Assembly: GCF_001194135.2 (NCBI RefSeq)
Contig: NC_068988.1
Span: 80,750,185 to 80,814,184 of the forward strand
Reading direction: 5' to 3'
DNA length: 64,000 nt
Origin: Octopus bimaculoides
Lineage: Eukaryota
Part shown: in pieces, positions 24,824 to 45,509 of the stretch
How positions within the stretch are numbered: the first letter of the stretch is position 1
Layout of the letters: every line of letters begins with the position of its first letter
Made by a program: the position numbers and the translations under genes
Notes under the pieces: generated by a model
What the model saw: only the letters and a program-made list of their open reading frames with translations
Told to the model about the DNA's origin: nothing
Databases searched by the model: none

Positions 24824-24873
<50 letters not shown>

Positions 24874-25429
24874 NNNNNNNNNNNNNNNNNNNNNNNNNNN
24901 NNNNNNNNNNNNNNNNNNNNNNNNNNNNNNNNNNNNNNNNNNNNNNNNNNNNNNNNNNNNNNNNNNNNNNNNNNNNNNNNNNNNNNNNNNNNNNNNNNNN
25001 NNNNNNNNNNNNNNNNNNNNNNNNNNNNNNNNNNNNNNNNNNNNNNNNNNNNNNNNNNNNNNNNNNNNNNNNNNNNNNNNNNNNNNNNNNNNNNNNNNNN
25101 NNNNNNNNNNNNNNNNNNNNNNNNNNNNNNNNNNNNNNNNNNNNNNNNNNNNNNNNNNNNNNNNNNNNNNNNNNNNNNNNNNNNNNNNNNNNNNNNNNNN
25201 NNNNNNNNNNNNNNNNNNNNNNNNNNNNNNNNNNNNNNNNNNNNNNNNNNNNNNNNNNNNNNNNNNNNNNNNNNNNNNNNNNNNNNNNNNNNNNNNNNNN
25301 NNNNNNNNNNNNNNNNNNNNTATATATAGATTTAATCAAAAGATTAAATGTGGTACTTAAAATGTTTGAGGCACCAGAATTTGGTAGGCTAAAAACCAAA
25401 AAACCAAATCAAGAGATTTGGTGAATAAA

Positions 25430-25680
25430 ATTTGAAGAAAAGCAACAAAAATTCAATAGGTTATAGCAGTATGTACGTTTCGTATAAACTTCATTTATTT
25501 ATGTAGTGAGAACACCACATAAGATGTGCAATGAACTAAAATTGAACTTCCATTATGCAGCTGAGGAGTACATTTTCATTGCACATTTTATGTGGTGTTC
25601 TCACTACATAAATAAATGAAGTTTATACGAAACGTACGTACTGCTATAACTTATTGAATTTTTGTTGCTTTTCTTCAAAT
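25430..25680. repeat. Inverted repeat, 106-bp arms with 39-bp spacer
   Basis: 25430-25535 is the reverse complement of 25575-25680 with 3 mismatches. Confidence 0.95.
25553..25650 (+). ncRNA. Type I hammerhead ribozyme with canonical core
   Basis: Stem I TTAT-GCAG / CTGC(T)ATAA; CUGAGGA 25561-25567; G10.1 25568 - C11.1 25628 closing an extended stem II; GAAA 25629-25632; stem III AC-GTAC-GT; GUA cleavage triplet 25638-25640. Confidence 0.8.
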
Positions 25681-25734
25681 ATATATATAAAAACGATTAA
25701 CCTACGTACCAATGGTTTCGCCTGTTACATATAT

Positions 25735-32037: not shown

Positions 32038-33334
32038 NNNNNNNNNNNNNNNNNNNNNNNNNNNNNNNNNNNNNNNNNNNNNNNNNNNNNNNNNNNNNNN
32101 NNNNNNNNNNNNNNNNNNNNNNNNNNNNNNNNNNNNNNNNNNNNNNNNNNNNNNNNNNNNNNNNNNNNNNNNNNNNNNNNNNNNNNNNNNNNNNNNNNNN
32201 NNNNNNNNNNNNNNNNNNNNNNNNNNNNNNNNNNNNNNNNNNNNNNNNNNNNNNNNNNNNNNNNNNNNNNNNNNNNNNNNNNNNNNNNNNNNNNNNNNNN
32301 NNNNNNNNNNNNNNNNNNNNNNNNNNNNNNNNNNNNNNNNNNNNNNNNNNNNNNNNNNNNNNNNNNNNNNNNNNNNNNNNNNNNNNNNNNNNNNNNNNNN
32401 NNNNNNNNNNNNNNNNNNNNNNNNNNNNNNNNNNNNNNNNNNNNNNNNNNNNNNNNNNNNNNNNNNNNNNNNNNNNNNNNNNNNNNNNNNNNNNNNNNNN
32501 NNNNNNNNNNNNNNNNNNNNNNNNNNNNNNNNNNNNNNNNNNNNNNNNNNNNNNNNNNNNNNNNNNNNNNNNNNNNNNNNNNNNNNNNNNNNNNNNNNNN
32601 NNNNNNNNNNNNNNNNNNNNNNNNNNNNNNNNNNNNNNNNNNNNNNNNNNNNNNNNNNNNNNNNNNNNNNNNNNNNNNNNNNNNNNNNNNNNNNNNNNNN
32701 NNNNNNNNNNNNNNNNNNNNNNNNNNNNNNNNNNNNNNNNNNNNNNNNNNNNNNNNNNNNNNNNNNNNNNNNNNNNNNNNNNNNNNNNNNNNNNNNNNNN
32801 NNNNNNNNNNNNNNNNNNNNNNNNNNNNNNNNNNNNNNNNNNNNNNNNNNNNNNNNNNNNNNNNNNNNNNNNNNNNNNNNNNNNNNNNNNNNNNNNNNNN
32901 NNNNNNNNNNNNNNNNNNNNNNNNNNNNNNNNNNNNNNNNNNNNNNNNNNNNNNNNNNNNNNNNNNNNNNNNNNNNNNNNNNNNNNNNNNNNNNNGTAAC
33001 AGGTAGTAGGTAGTAGCAGTCTTAAAAGAATGTTTGATAAGAGTTCGAGTTCTTGGTTTTGATTGTTTAAACAGCAGTTGTAGCTGAGGCAGTGAACAAG
33101 AAGGAGGAGGAGGAGGAGGAGAAGGAGGAGAAGAAGAAGAAGAAGAAGAAGAAGAAGAAGAAGAAGAAGAAGAAGAAGGAGAGAGTGGTATAACAGTAGT
33201 AGGATGTTGGTGGAATACTCTTAAATGGTCAAGTGACCTAAAAGTGACCTGTTGTAGTTTTAATAGTAGTGATTGGAATTGTCCTGAATAATTTGATGGG
33301 TAGTGACTGTTCTGAATATATCATTTTTAATATT

Positions 33335-34910
33335 TGTGTGGGTATTATTCTAAGGCCCTTGTAGTAGTGTCATTTGTGGTAGTCTCATTCAAAAGGGGTT
33401 TATATTTTGTGATAAAATATGACTCTGTTAATACGCTGACTGCAGGTTGCATCGTCCCTAAATTTATAGAGTGGAAATATTCTGAAGTTGGATTGTTTGT
33501 TAGTGGCGCAAATGTTGATGCGTTCACTGAAGGCTATTTTTCTGTATTCCCGAATTTTGGTCTGAGATCTATGTAGAGCCATCCTTTGACTGTTTTTGGT
33601 TTGGCCTATGTATTGCTCTTGACATCCAGAGCAAGTTACTACATATATTAGGTTCTCCAAAGCACATGTAAAGTTGTTTTTCACTGTAAAACATTGACCC
33701 TGTTTGAAAGAGAACTCCGACCCCTCAATCAGGTTGACGCATATACCACAGTTAGGTCTTTCACATTTTTTTACTGACGGCTTCAGTGTTATTGTCAAGT
33801 GTACTTGGGCTTCTCTGTTAGGAGACTTTTCATAGATTTGGGTTGTTTTTGCTCTTTCTGATGGTGTGAATTTGGAGGATTTAATTCATTCTGTGGTCTC
33901 TTTTTAGTAGAGGAATGTTCTGGAGGATGGTGTCGAAGGCTTCATTGTTAAGGGGTTTGTGTGTGGAGATGTATGGTAGGGCTTTTGGTTGTAAATCCTT
34001 CTTTAGTTTGGGATGTCTGAGTTCATTGATGTTGAGTTGTAGGGCACGTTGAAAGCCTATATCAATTAGTAATGGTGGGTAGTTCATGGTAATGAGTGTA
34101 TCCTTTAGTTCATGTAGTCGTGTGTCCCTGGTGCTTGTATTAGAAACTATAGTACAAATCCCTTTTGCTAGGTTGAAAGGGATATTCATTCTAGTGTGTC
34201 TGGGGTGGCATGAGTTGAACAGTAGATACTACTTGGAGTCTGTGAGCTTATAGTATATATCTATTTCTGTTTTGTTGTTGGATTTCTTAATGAGGATGTC
34301 GAGGAATGGAAGTTGTTGATGGCTATATTCCATTGTAAATTGAATGTTTATGTCAAGTCCATTTATAAGTACTTGAAATTCCTTAAGTCGCTCTATACTT
34401 TCATGCTAAAGAATGAAACAGTCATCCATATGCCTATTCCAGTTATTTTCTATGTAGAGGGAGAATGGGTTGCCATATTTTTCTAGTACCTTACAATAAA
34501 GACTGATTTCTAGATATCCAATGACTAGGTTAGCAAAGGAGGGGGCCATTCTCGTACCCATCACAGTCCCTGATTTTTGTTGATAGAAGTTGTCTTTGAA
34601 GAAAAAGTAGTTATTCTCCAAGATGAATTTTAGCCCTTCTATTACAAATTCTTCTTTGATGCGATGTGGGAGTAATTCTCTAGCCAGAATTAAATTGCCT
34701 CTATTTCAAGGCTGTGAGAGATATTAGAATAGAGATTGACTATGTCAAAGAATACTAATAGGGTGTTTTTGTTTATTGTTTTAGGGAGGTAATTGAGCAT
34801 ATGTAGGCCATCCCTTATGTAGCTTTTGATATGCTTCAGGAATAGTTTTTAGAGGGTATCTAAAAAGTTACTGAGGTGATGGGTTTTTCATGCAGGACCT
34901 GCTATTATAG
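33335..34910 (-). mobile_element. Penelope-like element 2 (RT, Cys-rich linker, GIY-YIG; Neptune-like), decayed
   Basis: QKSGTVMGTRMAPSFANL (motif B), RHMDDCF (motif C), KKCERPNCGIC linker, LIYVVTCSGCQEQYIGQT (GIY-YIG). Confidence 0.92.
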
Positions 34911-41028: not shown

Positions 41029-41534
41029 TTAATAATAATGAAATTGACCAAATTTTTGGTGTAAAAAAATATATTTAAACATATATATATATATATATAT
41101 ATATAAATATATATAAATATATATACATGTGTGTGTGTGTATATATGTATATGTCAGTGCAGGAGTGGCTATGAGGACAGAAACTTGTTTCCCAACCACA
41201 TGATTCTGGGTTTAGTACCCCTGCGTGGCACATTGTGAGTGGATTTGGTAGCTGGAAACTGAAAGAAGCCCATCATGTCTGTGTGTCTGTGTGTCTGTGT
41301 GTGACCCTTTCTCCATTTACGAAAACCTGTCCTCACAGTAGAATGCCATCCTCCCTGTTGATGAAGATTGTGTTGCATGAACCCTGTGCCAGTGCCATAT
41401 AAAAAGCACTTGTGCTGGTATCATGTGAGAGCAATCATACTGGTGGGCCAATACAAAACACCCAGCACTGCAAGGTAAATATGTATGTTTTAGTTTAATG
41501 TTTAATGTTTGGGAATGTGAGAAAGTGTTTTATG

Positions 41535-42248
41535 GTTGAAGCCTACACTCTTTTGGCTGTCTCCACACGTATACTTGGCCGGTGGTCAGAAATAAGGTAA
41601 AGGATGACTCGTCCAAGAAAATAACATTCTTCCACTGCTCTAGGGACCAATTCTGTAGGTTTCTACTCCACATTAAATGCTTTGCAACATTTGTTTTTGA
41701 AAGTAGTGGTTTTCTGATTGCAACACTCCTAAGAAATCCGGCTTTGTGCAGCTCCCAGCAAACAGCTTTTTGTGGAAACTGGGTTCTCGAGGTGGTCATT
41801 AAGTTCTGCAGTAATTTTGGGAGCTGTACTGTTGTGATCCTTTCTATCAATTTGTACAAGAGTCCGACGGTTCTTATCTGAAAGTTTTGGTTTTCTTCCA
41901 GAGTTTTGTTTTGACGAGGAGGTTTTTCCCTCTTTCTCAAAGGCTGTCATTACTTTCGAGACCGTACTTCTTGATACATCAAACATTTTGGCTGTTTTCG
42001 TTACGCTAGCGCCTGCCATACCAACAATTTGACCTCTTTGAAAGTCTAATAGATCTGTCATTTTAATGAATTTTAATTACTTTTTTCTGATAATATCTGA
42101 AAAGAAACAGCAGTTTTAGCAAAACATTAAGCAACACTAATATTAAATCAAAAAACATAAAGATAAACATGTTTTTGACAGTTTTATAGATATTTCAAAA
42201 TTATGATGCTATGATGCTAGGTGTTTCCATTATTTTGTCCAACACCTG
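41535..42248 (-). mobile_element. Tc1 (DD34E-type) element, 5' half with one TIR
   Basis: DLLDFQRGQIVG..ASVTKTAKMFDVSRSTVSKV...SGRKPKLSD (paired-like HTH), KPLLSKTN...WKNVIFLDESSF; minus-strand TIR CAGGTGTTGGACAAAATAATGGAAACAC next to TA 42249-42250. Confidence 0.9.
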
Positions 42249-42403: not shown

Positions 42404-43552
42404 TTTTCATCTTCGTGTGTGCTCTTGCTCCCCTTACTCCATTTTGCACTTCTATGATGTATATCCTTATGTGCACATGCATTTTCATCCATATTTGTGT
42501 GTGTGTGTCATTGTTCTTAGCAGCAGTATGGCCTTCCTCTCACCCCATTGTGCTGCTGCTGTCCTAAGACCCGAAAATTTGGTACAGTTCCTGTATCTCT
42601 CTGTGTTAGTGTGTTCGTCCATGGTATTGCCATTGTGGTAGTTGTTGTTGTTGTTATTGCCACCGTTGTCACCACCGCTGCTGTTATCATTGTTAGTTGT
42701 GTTGTTGATATTATTGCAGCCATCTGTGAAGTTATCTTGTGTGTGTTTGTGTGTGTATATGAGTTTGCTTCTTATGTTGCTTGTATTTATACCCTTTATA
42801 TAGATTTATTTATTTATCTATTATCTATCTCTATTTCTTATATTTGTCACAGGAATGTGACAAATATATTTATTTATTTTTATATATTTATCTACCTCTG
42901 TTTCTTATATGTATCACAAGTAAGTGCATATATGTCTATTGCGTGTGTATTACCCTGTTTGTATCTATGTTTTATTTATCATCTTCTTTACCTCTCACTT
43001 CTCCTCTCTTCTGTCTTTAGTCATGTGGTGTGGTGTGGTGTGGTGTGGTGGTGGGTGTTATTGTTCCATTCGTGTTTTCTGTCTACTGCTATGTGTGTAG
43101 CCTCTGTGAGCTGTCTTAGTGTCGTGTTAGTTCTATGCATTGATAACACTTTAACCTCTATGCTATTAATTGATCCTCCATGTTCTGCCTGAGCATGTTG
43201 GTAGAGCACTGATGAGCCTTTCTCTTCTTTGTGCTCTCGCCAGTATTACACCTATACGCTCTCCTATGCTGCATGCAGTCTCTGCAATGTAGGTAGTTGT
43301 CATATTTCTGCACCATCCCTCAGTACATCGTAAGCTATACACTATGTTCCTAACTTTACAGTTAACCCGTGAGTTCATCCTACATTCAACACAATTGTTC
43401 TCCATACATGGGGACTTATCAAAGGTGTAGGTTCTACAGATCAGGGATTTTGTAGGAGCACCAGGCCTTTCTACTACTTTAATCTGTAGATTAGCCTTAC
43501 TTAATGTTTTCCTAAAAGGGTATGTTAGTTTGCTGCCAGGGGTAGCATCAAC

Positions 43553-43786
43553 TATGATGCTATGATGCTAGGTGTTTCCATTATTTTGTCCAACCCCTGT
43601 ATATTGTTGTATTTCGGGATGGTTATTTTTTTTTTTTTTAACCAAATAAACAACACACTCTATATATTTGTTCTTCACTCGTTTATTACTGTTTTTATTT
43701 TAATTCATGTCCATTGTCCAGAAATCTTTCATCACACATCTGTAACCTCTTCAGTGACACTTTTCGTCTTCATGTGTGCTCTTGCT
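43553..43786 (-). repeat. Direct copy of 42202-42429 (PLE terminal repeat plus 49 nt of Tc1 end) inserted inside the PLE3 ORF
   Basis: About 230 bp with scattered substitutions and small indels; interrupts the ORF between ..NSWYD and DATPG.. Confidence 0.92.
43715..43760 (-). ncRNA. Second copy of the hammerhead-like motif
   Basis: 46 nt identical to 42358-42403. Confidence 0.6.
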
Positions 43787-45509
43787 GTCATACCAAGAGT
43801 TGGTCTTATCTATTTTGGTCCTTTCTGTGATGTTCTAGGATTTACTCCTGTACAGCGGGCAGATCCTCTTAGCATCACACTTTATGATGGCTTTGTACTT
43901 AGTTCTCATTACTTTGTACACTCTAATCCTGTCCTTTTGATTGTGGCCAGAGAACTGCATGCGGTGGATGAAGTGTTGTATGTCTTCCCAATTCCATAGG
44001 GTCACACATGTGAAAAACATTCTTCATCACTCTCACCAAGCCATCTATAAGAATGTTGAACTTGGCATTGTCTGCAATAGCTGCATTCTTGTGAACAAGG
44101 TACTTAGAGGCCATAGGTTTGGCATATTGAGAGTGAAGGATCTGGACCTTACCGTTCTTCATTTCTAGCCAAAGCTCTGTATCTTAAATGGGTAACCTAT
44201 AGTTAAGGTGCTTACTAGGGTAGTCTATCCTTATTTCAATATTCTGGTGGATGGAGTTCGCTATTAGTTGGATGTTCTCCATAGTGTTAGCTTCTGGATC
44301 ATCAATGTTGTCTTGTAGGGGTGCTTTGGCTACTATGTTGATGTCATCCACATAGCGGGTGTACATGGTTAGGTTTATGGAATTCTCTGCTAATTTCTCT
44401 TTAAGTCTCCTATCCCACCATACCATAAATATGTTAGACACATAGCCAGTGATACTGAACCGATGTCTGCACCTTCCTCATGGGCATATATCTTATTATT
44501 AAACTTAAACATATGATCCTTGTGTGTGGTCTTGGTACTCGCACCCACCTCATGTGCGACCATCTTTTTAACTTGATCATTGTTTTCGGGGGTCCATATA
44601 ACTCTGGTCCATCAATTCCATCTCTCTTTAGGGGTCTTCTTGGTCATAGAAGTTATGGTAGGGGGTCTACCTGTTATCAATCTAGTGGGGCAGAAACAAC
44701 TAAGGCCATGTTTATCTAAGTAATCGTTGTCGCAGGTCAGTCTCAAGAGGAGGCCAAGTTCTTCTGTGTCAATACCATGAAACTCCATATCGCTCTTGCT
44801 GATCACCTCCACACATTTTTTCTCACCAAAATCAACATCAGTGGATGGGTATAGGGACACTACATCCATACTGCCTATTATGCATTCTGTCAGGTCATAT
44901 GCATGGTTGCACTCATTGATTCTGCTGAGGAGGTCCTCTGTGCTGAGACATACATCTGGAGACATTCTTATCAGAGGGTGTATAATCATAGAGTGGAAGT
45001 AGTAGATCCAGTAGTTGTTGGCAACATTGGCTCCACAGACCAGTCACGTCAGTGGTCATCTTATGGTCCTTGTGCAGTCCATACAGTGATGGGATGTTGT
45101 TATTAGTGACCTGGAAGTTGTTGGCCATGGACTTCTTTGCCCTTGGATGTTTAACCACATCATCATATGAGCATTTAGGATCTTCTCTCTCTCCTCATTC
45201 TCCCGTATCCTTGTTTCCCTCATATTGATGATGTGGGGTTGCATCGCCTGGCTGTAGTTAGGTAGGCTGTCTACCAACATTCATATACTCATTCTTTCTT
45301 TCATGTCAGTCATGCACTTGTCCTTCCTCATATTAACGCTCATTTCTTTTTCTAAGTGAAGGTGGACTTATTTCACACATCTTTAAAAAAGTGGTAATTG
45401 TGGACATGAGGTTGATGAGAACACCAGTTTCAACTTTCTGAGAGATATAAACAAACATGCACTTGTGCACACATGCTGGTGTTTATATACACTCATACAT
45501 ATATACATG

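What the first reader, a model, noticed from the sequence alone, without database searches (positions are those of the whole stretch)
25553..25650. Hammerhead ribozyme with a fully canonical catalytic core hidden in a palindrome
Seen: every conserved position is present on the plus strand: CUGAGGA (25561-25567), G10.1-C11.1 (25568/25628), GAAA (25629-25632), A15.1-U16.1, GUA triplet with predicted cleavage after 25640, and an 8-bp stem I with one bulge. Stem II is unusually long (GTA/TAC, TTTCATT/AATGAAG, then TTTATGTGGTG-TTCT-CACTACATAAA). Stem III is only AC-GTAC-GT and self-complementary. Established: minimal type I hammerheads with palindromic stem III occur in terminal repeats of Penelope-like elements and retrozymes and can cleave as dimers. 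Inference: this is a solo PLE/retrozyme terminal repeat that may still self-cleave; no parent ORF is adjacent, although a gap lies 230 bp upstream.
Basis: partly seen in the sequence, partly recalled or inferred. Interest (0 to 1): 0.88.

Follow-up and report, generated by a model that had tools for sequence, protein, structure and literature searches.

The report
Hammerhead ribozyme in a Penelope-type repeat
The hammerhead motif is really there, but it is one copy of a roughly 900-copy short retroelement family that inserts Penelope-style into (TA)n microsatellites, a known kind of ribozyme-bearing repeat and not a one-off curiosity.

Summary
A loose hammerhead (HHR) descriptor finds only this site in the window, against 0.089 hits per shuffled window. 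With a helix III palindrome of 6 nt or more, 0 of 2500 shuffles match. Rfam RF00163 aligns end to end in the predicted register, but only on a short slice and below threshold (17.3 versus 34 bits), because helix II holds 57 extra bases.

The motif is not a solo relic. It lies in a 145-bp unit of a non-autonomous family of about 270-380 bp. The 24-nt 5' half has 898 near-exact genomic matches. Copies have variable 5' ends and two alternative 3' ends, both abutting (TA)n. About 15% of the listed loci are head-to-head inverted pairs in which only one arm carries the long tail. These are the published hallmarks of Penelope-like element (PLE) integration.

The "palindrome" is such a pair, 25329-25680, made in one event inside a (TA)n tract. 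The upstream gap is unassembled microsatellite.

The HHR core is intact in both subfamily consensuses. This copy carries a helix II mismatch (25625 G>A). If the left arm is co-transcribed, the motif would be buried in a 106-bp hairpin.

No covariation, no partner ORF and no cleavage data were obtained. Verdict: new member of a known kind.

The parts
24824..24873 (.). (TA)25 microsatellite, the left part of the target tract
   Evidence: Tandem Repeats Finder and direct reading.
24874..25320 (.). Assembly gap (N run) inside the (TA)n tract
   Evidence: N run listed. It is flanked by TA repeats on both sides.
25321..25328 (.). TATATATA, the remainder of the target microsatellite abutting the element
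25329..25429 (-). Long-form 3' 'tail' (about 100 nt) of the inverted copy. It ends ...GATTAAATC next to (TA)n.
   Evidence: It aligns with the tails of L018, L022 and L033. The tail is present on only one arm of the dimers.
25430..25535 (-). Inverted, 5'-truncated copy of the family unit (unit positions 40-145). It carries only the 3' half of the hammerhead, on the minus strand.
   Evidence: Inverted repeat found; BLAST to the unit gives 97% over positions 40-145.
25536..25680 (+). Direct copy of the 145-bp family unit, short-form 3' end ...TTCTTCAAAT, holding the complete hammerhead
   Evidence: Solo copies 95-98% identical occur elsewhere in the genome.
25553..25560 (+). Helix I, 5' strand (UUAUGCAG)
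25561..25567 (+). Core C3-U4-G5-A6-G7-G8-A9 (CUGAGGA)
   Evidence: aligned to the RF00163 core.
25568..25628 (+). Helix II, 61 nt in three stacked segments. Position 25625 is A in both arms here but G in all 55 other copies sampled, so the fourth pair of helix II (C-G) is a C/A mismatch in this copy.
   Evidence: Folds; family alignments; shared-variant count.
25629..25631 (+). Core G12-A13-A14
25632..25639 (+). Helix III: A15.1-C / GUAC / G-U16.1. ACGUACGU is fully self-complementary, so two copies can form an 8-bp intermolecular helix III.
   Evidence: palindrome test.
25640..25640 (+). A17. The predicted cleavage is between 25640 and 25641.
   Evidence: Position in the motif. Cleavage was not tested.
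25641..25649 (+). Helix I, 3' strand (CUGC-U-AUAA, with bulged U at 25645)
25680..25689 (.). (TA)5, the right part of the target microsatellite. It overlaps the last base of the unit.

Best explanation
The region 25329-25680 is one insertion of a short, non-coding retroelement family of about 270-380 bp, mobilised in trans by a Penelope-like element (PLE).

How the insertion arose (inferred):
1. The PLE endonuclease cut a (TA)n microsatellite.
2. Reverse transcription was primed on both DNA strands from RNA of one source.
3. It started at two alternative sites near the RNA 3' end.
4. The result is a head-to-head pair. The left, minus-strand arm carries the roughly 100-nt 'tail' and is 5'-truncated at unit position 40. 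The right, plus-strand arm has the short 3' end.

The ribozyme: the family's sense strand carries a genuine type I hammerhead. It has a full canonical core, an open helix I of 8 bp, an unusually long helix II of 61 nt, and a minimal helix III of 2 bp closed by a palindromic loop. As in other PLE and animal hammerheads, helix III is too weak for a monomer. The inferred active form is either a dimer, in which two ACGUACGU segments pair into an 8-bp helix III, or a protein-assisted fold. The inferred chemistry is in-line attack of the 2'-OH of A17, cutting between 25640 and 25641 to leave a 2',3'-cyclic phosphate and a 5'-OH.

What is shown: the motif, the family, and the insertion architecture.
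What is inferred: catalysis, the dimer, and the PLE partner.

This particular copy is most likely a dead passenger. It has a helix II mismatch, and the inverted arm would sequester it.
For: Motif:
- Every core position and all three helices are present.
- RF00163 aligns over the whole model in the same register.
- Chance expectation is 0.089 per window for a loose descriptor, and 0 of 2500 shuffles with a helix III palindrome of 6 nt or more.

Family:
- 898 genomic matches to the 24-nt 5' half (up to 1 mismatch) against 0 for the reversed control.
- 812 exact matches to CGAAACGTACGTAC against 27 for the control.
- At least 1199 first-look candidates for the unit.
- The consensus forms a better hammerhead than the window copy, with GUAC/GUAC at the base of helix II.
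- The young and old subfamily consensuses differ at 11 unit positions. Eight lie in distal helix II and none lies in the core, helix I, helix III or the base of helix II.
- Core plus helix I carries 1.25% changes against 3.0% elsewhere in the unit.

PLE-type integration:
- 5' ends are variable.
- There are two alternative 3' ends, short and long-tail. Of 55 ends, 26 are short ends that abut (TA)n directly and 25 are long-tail ends. The long tail itself ends next to TA repeats where the sequence is resolved.
- In about a dozen of the head-to-head dimers sampled, exactly one arm is long and one is short.
- Junction positions differ between loci.
- The two arms of a dimer share variants found nowhere else.
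- Orientation bias: 13 (-,+) pairs, 0 (+,-) and 1 direct pair in the 14-mer list. The other lists give 11:1:0 and 6:0:1.
- These features match published descriptions: an inverted 5'-truncated copy, a tail at one end only, microsatellite targets, and hammerheads in the terminal repeats (PMC8557442); two reverse-transcription start sites and extension of both DNA strands (PMC11167929); and paired minimal hammerheads 100-700 bp apart on opposite strands (PMC4209133).
- The genome has 2261 first-look GIY-YIG candidates. All 149 reported matches exceeded the Pfam cut-off.
Against: - No compensatory base changes support any helix. There are 0 double changes, because the family is too young.
- The Rfam score is half the gathering score, and the hit is invisible with default filters.
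- The hammerhead fold is 4-5 kcal/mol above the minimum-free-energy fold, and a competing GUACG-AAA-CGUAC hairpin exists.
- No autonomous partner sharing the 3' end was identified. No PLE ORF lies within about 4.5 kb of any of the 20 copies fetched with 10-kb context, or within about 1.5 kb of the 14 other loci held.
- The conservation statistics count related copies as if they were independent.
- The role of the hammerhead is unknown even in canonical PLEs. In vitro, catalytic mutants of the hammerhead did not affect insertion (PMC11167929).
- The 61-nt helix II lies outside the published range for PLE minimal hammerheads, which is 6-8 bp.
Confidence: 0.8

Rival explanations
1. The motif is a chance hammerhead look-alike in a SINE or MITE that has nothing to do with PLEs. 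The core heptamer, GAAA and the pairings arose by accident in an AT-rich repeat and were simply amplified with it.
For: - A loose descriptor match arises by chance in 6-9% of windows of this composition. That would mean thousands of chance matches per 2.3-Gb genome.
- There is no covariation.
- The Rfam score is sub-threshold.
- The minimum-free-energy fold is not the hammerhead.
Against: - The 8-nt palindromic helix III never appeared in 2500 shuffles.
- RF00163 aligns end to end.
- The motif lies on the sense strand of an element that independently shows the PLE insertion signature. Hammerheads are described as universal in PLEs other than the Naiad and Chlamys clades (PMC8557442).
- Subfamily-level changes avoid the core and helices I and III.
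Confidence: 0.08
2. It is a non-LTR retrozyme. On this reading, a tandem-repeat element has its transcripts cut by hammerheads at both ends and ligated into small circular RNAs, and these circles are the transposition intermediates.
For: - The size range (about 270-380 bp), the low GC content, and a type I hammerhead with a 2-bp helix III closed by a tetraloop all resemble invertebrate retrozymes (PMC7229834).
- Retrozymes are themselves proposed to derive from PLE terminal repeats (bioRxiv 10.64898/2026.07.22.740005).
Against: - Direct tandems are rare: 1 direct pair against 13 head-to-head pairs in 100 places, and 0 and 1 in the other two lists.
- Copies have fixed 3' ends and truncated 5' ends, not circularly permuted ends.
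- Helix I is open, and there is no loop 1 to contact loop 2.
Confidence: 0.06
3. The functional entity is the palindrome, not the ribozyme. On this reading, the 106-bp inverted repeat is transcribed into a long hairpin RNA that feeds small-RNA pathways as a source of endo-siRNA or miRNA-like RNAs, or it is a foldback DNA transposon.
For: - The 261-nt transcript folds into a near-perfect hairpin of -170 kcal/mol, z = -30.6.
- Several plant and animal miRNA covariance models give sub-threshold hits because of the hairpin.
- Many such head-to-head loci exist in the genome.
Against: - All miRNA hits are far below their gathering scores.
- Most family copies are solo, with no inverted arm.
- Arm junctions differ from locus to locus, so the hairpin is not a conserved unit.
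- The termini of the insertion are asymmetric, with a tail on one side only. It therefore lacks the symmetric terminal inverted repeats of a MITE or foldback element.
Confidence: 0.05

Closest known systems
Minimal type I hammerheads in the pseudo-LTRs of Penelope-like elements and their dispersed truncated copies (Cervera and De la Pena 2014, PMC4209133)
   Same: - Canonical core, open helix I, and a helix II larger than in classical hammerheads.
- Helix III reduced to 1-2 bp with a palindromic loop, implying action as a dimer.
- Hundreds to thousands of dispersed copies.
- Pairs 100-700 bp apart on opposite strands.
- Not found by standard models.
   Different: - Helix II is 61 nt in three segments, against the 6-8 bp described.
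- Helix I is 8 bp with a bulge, against 4-5 bp.
- The carrier is a non-coding element of about 270-380 bp, with no ORF found nearby.
- The autonomous partner is unidentified.
PLE insertion architecture: partial tandems and inverted 5'-truncated copies, an optional one-sided 'tail', and microsatellite targets (Craig et al. 2021, PMC8557442; Frangieh et al. 2024, PMC11167929)
   Same: - Head-to-head pairs with their 3' ends pointing outward.
- Exactly one arm carries the tail.
- Two alternative 3' ends.
- Insertion into (TA)n, as reported for the Hydra and Naiad clades.
- Assembly gaps at the insertions.
   Different: - The tail is about 100 nt, not 30-40 nt.
- The element encodes nothing.
- The clade of the mobilising PLE (Hydra, Naiad or Neptune) was not determined.
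Non-LTR retrozymes of animals (Cervera and De la Pena 2020, PMC7229834)
   Same: Short, AT-rich, non-autonomous elements with a type I hammerhead whose helix III is 2 bp closed by a tetraloop. They are thought to derive from PLE terminal repeats.
   Different: Retrozymes are direct tandem arrays that give circular RNAs. This family is dispersed as solo copies and inverted pairs, with almost no direct tandems.
Rfam RF00163 Hammerhead_1
   Same: The full-model alignment places the core, helix I, the closing pairs of helix II and the palindromic helix III in register.
   Different: The score is 17.3 bits against a gathering score of 34. There are 57 inserted nucleotides in helix II where the model has 10. 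N7 is G, and the cleavage triplet is GUA where the model consensus has GUC.

Membership tests
Hammerhead ribozyme (type I, minimal helix III) | Conserved core: C3 U4 G5 A6 N7 G8 A9, G12 A13 A14, the A15.1-U16.1 pair, and H17 not G | tested here: met
   Read directly at 25561-25567, 25629-25632, 25639 and 25640. All are aligned to the RF00163 core.
Hammerhead ribozyme (type I, minimal helix III) | Three helices around the core, with helix I open (the 5' and 3' ends lie in helix I) | tested here: met
   Helix I is 8 bp with a bulge. Helix II is closed by G10.1-C11.1. Helix III is 2 bp with a GUAC loop. Across 29 distinct copies, 97.9% of cells are paired.
Hammerhead ribozyme (type I, minimal helix III) | Match to the curated covariance model at its gathering score | tested here: not met
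   No hit at gathering thresholds or at E<=10 on 471 nt. On a 108-nt slice the score is 17.3 bits against 34. The model also misses a textbook minimal hammerhead in L030, so this test has low power for PLE-type motifs.
Hammerhead ribozyme (type I, minimal helix III) | Compensatory base changes (covariation) in the helices | tested here: inconclusive
   There are 0 pairs with changes on both sides, and the result is no better than shuffles. Copies are 88-98% identical, which is too little variation. Distal helix II keeps its pairing between subfamilies through a U-A to U-G change and a shift in register.
Hammerhead ribozyme (type I, minimal helix III) | Site-specific self-cleavage giving a 2',3'-cyclic phosphate and a 5'-OH | not testable with these tools
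   This needs in vitro transcription or end-specific RNA sequencing.
Penelope-like element (as a non-autonomous derivative) | A single ORF with a reverse transcriptase and a GIY-YIG endonuclease | tested here: not met
   There is no ORF in the element. tblastn with a PLE ORF found nothing in the 34 other family loci searched, which give about 4.5 kb of flank for 20 copies and about 1.5 kb for the rest, and no long PLE-like ORFs were seen. The element is therefore at most non-autonomous. The genome does hold 2261 first-look GIY-YIG candidates.
Penelope-like element (as a non-autonomous derivative) | An inverted 5'-truncated copy adjacent to the direct copy (head-to-head) | tested here: met
   In the window. 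Other loci have different junctions. Orientation counts (head-to-head: tail-to-tail: direct) are 13:0:1, 11:1:0 and 6:0:1. Arms share private variants.
Penelope-like element (as a non-autonomous derivative) | An optional 3' 'tail' present at only one end of the insertion, reflecting two reverse-transcription start sites | tested here: met
   Two classes of 3' end: 26 short ends that abut (TA)n directly and 25 long-tail ends. Where both ends of a dimer could be read, most (about a dozen) have one of each; the exceptions are the suspected assembly duplicate in L009 and L005/L016. The tail is about 100 nt here against the published 30-40 nt.
Penelope-like element (as a non-autonomous derivative) | Bias for inserting into microsatellites | tested here: met
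   (TA)n flanks both sides of the window insertion. It follows 26 of the 30 short or unclassified ends sampled.
Penelope-like element (as a non-autonomous derivative) | 3'-end sequence shared with an autonomous PLE of the same genome | not tested
One lead remains: a GIY-YIG hit at C1:77029604-77029861(-) starts about 45 nt after the short 3' end of a family copy.
Non-LTR retrozyme | Direct tandem repeats, each with a hammerhead, that yield unit-length circular RNAs | tested here: not met
   Only 1 direct pair appears among 100 listed places in each of two lists and 0 in the third. Circular RNAs cannot be tested here.
MITE or foldback DNA transposon | Terminal inverted repeats at the true element ends, with target-site duplications | tested here: not met
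   The inverted repeat is internal, and one side extends about 100 nt further as the tail. Most copies are solo with no inverted arm and have truncated 5' ends.

The most novel reading that the evidence does not exclude
This family may define an overlooked hammerhead architecture: a type I core whose two halves are separated by a conserved, three-segment helix II of about 60 nt. Such a motif escapes both Rfam and the usual RNAmotif descriptors.

If its mobilising partner is a (TA)n-targeting Naiad or Hydra PLE, then the 'HHR_half_core' cases reported for Naiads would be real long-helix-II ribozymes. In those cases CUGANGA and GAAA lie 35-50 nt apart (PMC8557442). The clade said to 'lack canonical hammerheads' would then have them after all.

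Five RF00163 hits of 101-108 nt elsewhere in this genome suggest that long-insertion hammerheads are not unique to this family.
Probability: 0.2. Interest if true: 0.5.

Novelty: new member of a known kind. Interest (0 to 1): 0.3.

Why it matters
Hammerheads in Penelope-like elements and their short derivatives have been known since 2014, and they are massively abundant in animal genomes. The existence of this one is therefore expected biology.

Three smaller points have some value.
1. It shows concretely how a PLE-type insertion looks in raw sequence: an inverted twin, a one-sided tail, a (TA)n target and an assembly gap. It also shows why such repeats may end up among the many 'unclassified SINE' families reported in an octopus repeat annotation (PMC13282606). 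That paper does not mention hammerheads.
2. The 61-nt helix II shows that curated models and standard descriptors under-count this ribozyme class.
3. The family is young, with copies 95-98% identical to the window unit. That makes it a practical substrate for testing whether PLE hammerheads cleave as dimers or with protein help, which is still an open question.

Tried and rejected
- **Rfam at default settings.** It gave nothing for the motif, only sub-threshold miRNA and snoRNA hits caused by the hairpin. I rejected these as spurious.
- **tRNA-derived SINE head.** ARAGORN found no tRNA in three loci holding full-length copies. Rfam at E<=10 on one full-length copy found nothing tRNA- or 5S-like.
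- **Covariation.** Counting pairs on 29 distinct copies showed no double changes.
- **Autonomous partner in held sequence.**
  - tblastn with a PLE ORF from L037 against the window and the 34 other family loci held hit only an unrelated remnant in the window.
  - Long ORFs in the loci were low-complexity, a mucin-like gene, or a mariner fragment.
  - The L037 PLE ends next to a (CA)n run about 480 bp downstream of its stop codon and shares no DNA with the family.
- **Fetching the C1:77.03 Mb locus, where a GIY-YIG hit abuts a family copy.** I did not try to walk the locus with short patterns.
- **Naming the organism through the window's PLE endonuclease ORF.** No homologues were found in the protein collection.
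- **Cross-species copies.** The 24-mer has no match in the metagenome contigs.
- **Supplementary tables of Craig et al. 2021.** These are not held.
- **The second minimal hammerhead, in L030.** It belongs to another repeat family and is not adjacent to any scored GIY-YIG hit.
Full report
**1.

- Core: CTGAGGA at 25561-25567.
- Helix II closing pair: G 25568 with C 25628.
- GAAA at 25629-25632.
- Helix III: the self-complementary octamer ACGTACGT at 25632-25639, read as A15.1-C / GUAC / G-U16.1.
- Cleavage site: A17 at 25640.
- Helix I: TTATGCAG (25553-25560) pairs with CTGC-T-ATAA (25641-25649).

The surrounding 'palindrome' is a 106-nt inverted repeat, 25430-25535 with 25575-25680. It is 97% complementary, with 39 nt between the arms.

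A simple hammerhead (HHR) descriptor required CUGANGA, a helix II closed by at least 3 bp, GAAA, U16.1, H17 and at least 4 bp of helix I.
- It finds exactly one site on both strands of the 64-kb window, and that is this one.
- Dinucleotide-preserving shuffles give 0.077-0.089 such hits per window. The loose motif alone is therefore only marginally surprising.
- A helix III segment that is a palindrome of 6 nt or more never occurred in 2500 shuffled windows.

**2. Covariance models**

Rfam finds no family at gathering scores in the window. It finds no hammerhead at E<=10 on 471 nt. That search returned only sub-threshold miRNA and snoRNA matches produced by the long hairpin.

On a 108-nt slice, where the speed filters are laxer, RF00163 (Hammerhead_1) aligns over its whole length (model 1-45) to 25555-25647(+).
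- The score is 17.3 bits against a gathering score of 34, with E=0.063.
- Helix II holds 57 nucleotides where the model has 10.

As a control on the power of this test, a textbook minimal hammerhead turned up by chance in locus L030. It has CUGAAGA, an 8-bp helix II, GAAA, A-CGAUCG-U and a 5-bp helix I. It gets no RF00163 alignment at all. A missing or weak model hit therefore says little for hammerheads of the Penelope type.

**3. What the sequence belongs to**

The window lies on a chromosome-scale scaffold of a 2.34-Gb genome with 145,327 contigs, evidently an animal genome.

Searching that genome with the 251-bp palindrome gave at least 1199 first-look candidates. It showed that the repeated unit is window 25536-25680 (145 bp), which contains the whole hammerhead. 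Many solo copies are 95-98% identical to it.

Pattern counts across the genome:

| Pattern | Matches | Reversed control |
|---|---|---|
| 24-nt 5' half of the hammerhead, up to 1 mismatch | 898 | 0 |
| CGAAACGTACGTAC, exact | 812 | 27 |
| 23-nt 3' terminus, up to 1 mismatch | 680 | 0 |

Aligning solo copies with their flanks defines the family.
- It is a non-coding element of about 270-380 bp.
- Homology extends a variable 0-125 nt upstream of the unit, so the 5' ends are truncated to different degrees.
- The element stops at one of two places. The short end is ...TTCTTCAA. The long end lies about 100 nt further on, at ...GATTAAATC.
- Of 55 sampled 3' ends, 26 are short and run directly into (TA)n, and 25 continue into the long tail. 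The long tail itself ends next to TA repeats where the sequence is resolved.
- No tRNA-like head was found.
- No PLE-like ORF lies within about 4.5 kb of the 20 copies fetched with 10-kb context, or within about 1.5 kb of the 14 other loci held.

**4. The palindrome is an insertion signature**

In about a dozen of the head-to-head dimers I hold, including the window, one arm carries the long tail and the other has the short end.

The junction between the arms differs from locus to locus, so these are independent events and not copies of one foldback element.

Within a dimer the two arms share variants seen nowhere else. In the window, both arms have A at unit position 90 (25625 and its mirror position). 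All 55 other sequences have G there. Each dimer was therefore made in a single event from one RNA lineage.

Genome-wide orientation is very one-sided, as counted among the first 100 listed places for each pattern:

| Pattern | Head-to-head (-,+) | Tail-to-tail (+,-) | Direct |
|---|---|---|---|
| 14-mer | 13 | 0 | 1 |
| 3'-end 23-mer | 11 | 1 | 0 |
| 24-mer | 6 | 0 | 1 |

The window insertion (25329-25680) sits inside a (TA)n tract.
- On the left are (TA)25 at 24824-24873, then an assembly gap, then TATATATA.
- On the right is (TA)5.

This combination is what has been described for Penelope-like elements (PLEs):
- an inverted 5'-truncated copy next to the direct one;
- a tail present at only one end;
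- microsatellite targets, specifically (TA)n for the Hydra and Naiad clades;
- resulting trouble for genome assemblies (PMC8557442).

In vitro, a PLE protein cleaves and extends both DNA strands. It starts reverse transcription at two internal sites, and the sequence between them is the 'tail' (PMC11167929). Cervera and De la Pena also reported paired minimal hammerheads 100-700 bp apart on opposite strands, alongside many solo ones (PMC4209133).

The genome has the enzymes. There are 2261 first-look GIY-YIG candidates, and all 149 reported matches exceeded the Pfam cut-off. A C-terminal-endonuclease PLE ORF lies in L037.

Twin priming by a LINE would invert a different, upstream segment. It would not duplicate the same 3' region on both arms. 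A MITE would have symmetric termini. Neither fits.

**5. Is the hammerhead a real feature of the family?**

Evidence in favour:
- The family consensus makes a better ribozyme than the window copy. The base of helix II is GUAC/GUAC in the consensus, and the window's A at 25625 breaks its fourth pair.
- Two subfamily consensuses differ at 11 unit positions. Eight lie in distal helix II, three lie outside the motif, and none lies in the core, helix I, helix III or the base of helix II.
- Distal helix II keeps a continuous three-segment hairpin in both subfamilies, through a U-A to U-G change and a shift in register after a 2-nt deletion.
- Across copies, the core plus helix I shows 1.25% changes against 3.0% in the rest of the unit. 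Fisher's test gives p=3e-4, but related copies are counted as if independent.
- The 24-mer covering helix I and the core is also more often intact (898 matches) than the 3' terminal 23-mer (680 matches).

Evidence against:
- There is no pair with a compensatory double change.
- The hammerhead fold is 4-5 kcal/mol above the minimum-free-energy fold.
- A GUACG-AAA-CGUAC hairpin competes with it.

On balance I put the probability that the family master encodes a true hammerhead at about 0.85-0.9. I put the probability of the whole picture at 0.8: a hammerhead carried by a non-autonomous element that a PLE mobilises.

**6. How it most likely works**

Shown: the motif, its polarity (it lies on the sense strand of the retroelement, 40 nt from the short 3' end), and the insertion architecture.

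Inferred, from established hammerhead chemistry and from the literature on PLE and animal hammerheads (PMC4209133, PMC7229834, PMC11167929):
- Helix III (2 bp with a GUAC loop) is too weak for a monomer.
- Either two sense copies pair their ACGUACGU segments into an 8-bp helix III, or a PLE protein stabilises the fold.
- The 2'-OH of A17 then attacks the adjacent phosphate, cutting between 25640 and 25641.

The biological role is unsettled even for canonical PLEs. Catalytic mutants of the hammerhead did not affect insertion in vitro (PMC11167929).

At this locus the ribozyme is probably silent, for two reasons.
- A transcript that includes the left arm folds into a 106-bp hairpin of -170.4 kcal/mol, z = -30.6. 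The hammerhead fold is only -19 kcal/mol. The hairpin buries helix II, GAAA, helix III and the cleavage site.
- The copy carries the helix II mismatch.

**7. Comparison, novelty and limits**

This is a new member of a known kind, an HHR-bearing derivative of a PLE.

It departs from the published minimal hammerheads mainly in its 61-nt helix II and its longer helix I. The element's tail is also longer than published, about 100 nt against 30-40.

It is not a typical retrozyme, because direct tandems are almost absent.

- One lead remains. A GIY-YIG hit at C1:77029604-77029861(-) begins about 45 nt after the short 3' end of a family copy, and that copy is itself part of a head-to-head pair.
- Chance proximity of this kind is roughly 0.005 for that chromosome, by my own estimate from the hit counts.

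Naiad PLEs target (TA)n and are reported to have 'half cores' 35-50 nt apart (PMC8557442). A link to them is therefore possible but untested.

RF00163 over the whole genome scored only 74 of 186,549 candidates. It still returned 11 hits above threshold, and five of the 26 listed hits (three of them above threshold) are 101-108 nt long. The one of these that could be checked, on C1, does not belong to this family. Hammerheads with long insertions may therefore be a wider class in this genome.

The organism was not identified. It has 30 chromosome-scale scaffolds and 2.34 Gb, which from memory would fit an octopus. That is a guess and was not tested.

Noticed in passing
L030 4849-4889 (minus strand); genome C10:91256754-91256934: A second, textbook minimal hammerhead: CUGAAGA, an 8-bp helix II, GAAA, the palindrome A-CGAUCG-U, and a 5-bp helix I. 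It belongs to a different repeat family, with at least 264 first-look candidates at 89-94% identity. It sits in its own head-to-head junction about 150 bp upstream of a copy of the studied family. RF00163 does not align to it at all.
   Followed up: partly
window 33403-34705 (minus strand): Degenerate coding remnant of a Penelope-like element. A GIY-YIG-like ORF at 33403-33885 scores Pfam E=0.007, below the cut-off. RT-like ORFs lie at 33884-34228 and 34406-34705. The remnant is 39-41% identical to the PLE ORF of L037 by tblastn. It shares no DNA with the hammerhead family, and no hammerhead descriptor hit lies nearby.
   Followed up: partly
window 43169-45043 (minus strand): A second PLE-like remnant. 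The ORF at 43169-43567 has a C-x4-C-x2-C linker followed by a GIY-YIG-like 'IVYSLRC...YIAET'. A possible RT piece lies at 44615-45043. Pfam found nothing at E<=0.01, so this reading rests on inspection alone.
   Followed up: partly
window 41533-42076 (minus strand): Fragment of a Tc1/mariner-type transposase. Pfam HTH_Tnp_Tc3_2 gives E=4.5e-4, below the cut-off.
   Followed up: partly
genome C19:19188759-19188866, C6:111873201-111873305, C12:36582935-36583039, C1:84987409-84987516, C15:22780084-22780184: RF00163 hits of 101-108 nt that cover the whole 45-position model, so each holds an insertion of about 60 nt. They score 31.6-39.1 bits, and three of the five are above the gathering score. 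The C1 hit is not matched by any of the three sequence patterns of the studied family. Long-insertion hammerheads may therefore exist in other families here. The sequences could not be fetched.
   Followed up: partly
genome C1:77029604-77030270: A GIY-YIG domain hit (minus strand, 115-aa open frame) begins about 45 nt after the short 3' end of a minus-strand family copy. That copy has a duplicated 5' half of the hammerhead (two 24-mers 75 bp apart). It is paired head-to-head with a plus-strand copy. This is either a candidate partner element or a second insertion into the same (TA)n tract.
   Followed up: partly
window gaps at 24874-25320 and 32038-32995; loci L018, L028, L032, L033, L035: Assembly gaps (N runs) repeatedly sit in the microsatellite flanks of these insertions, next to TA repeats and in one window case next to TA/CA repeats. 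In L009, two identical dimers flank a 10-N join, which looks like an assembly duplication and not real biology.
   Followed up: no
L037 1810-1860 (minus-strand reading): A PLE copy encoding a C-terminal GIY-YIG domain with a C-x4-C-x2-C linker has a (CA)n run about 480 bp downstream of its stop codon, which may mark the end of the element. If so, PLE families in this genome target different microsatellites.
   Followed up: no
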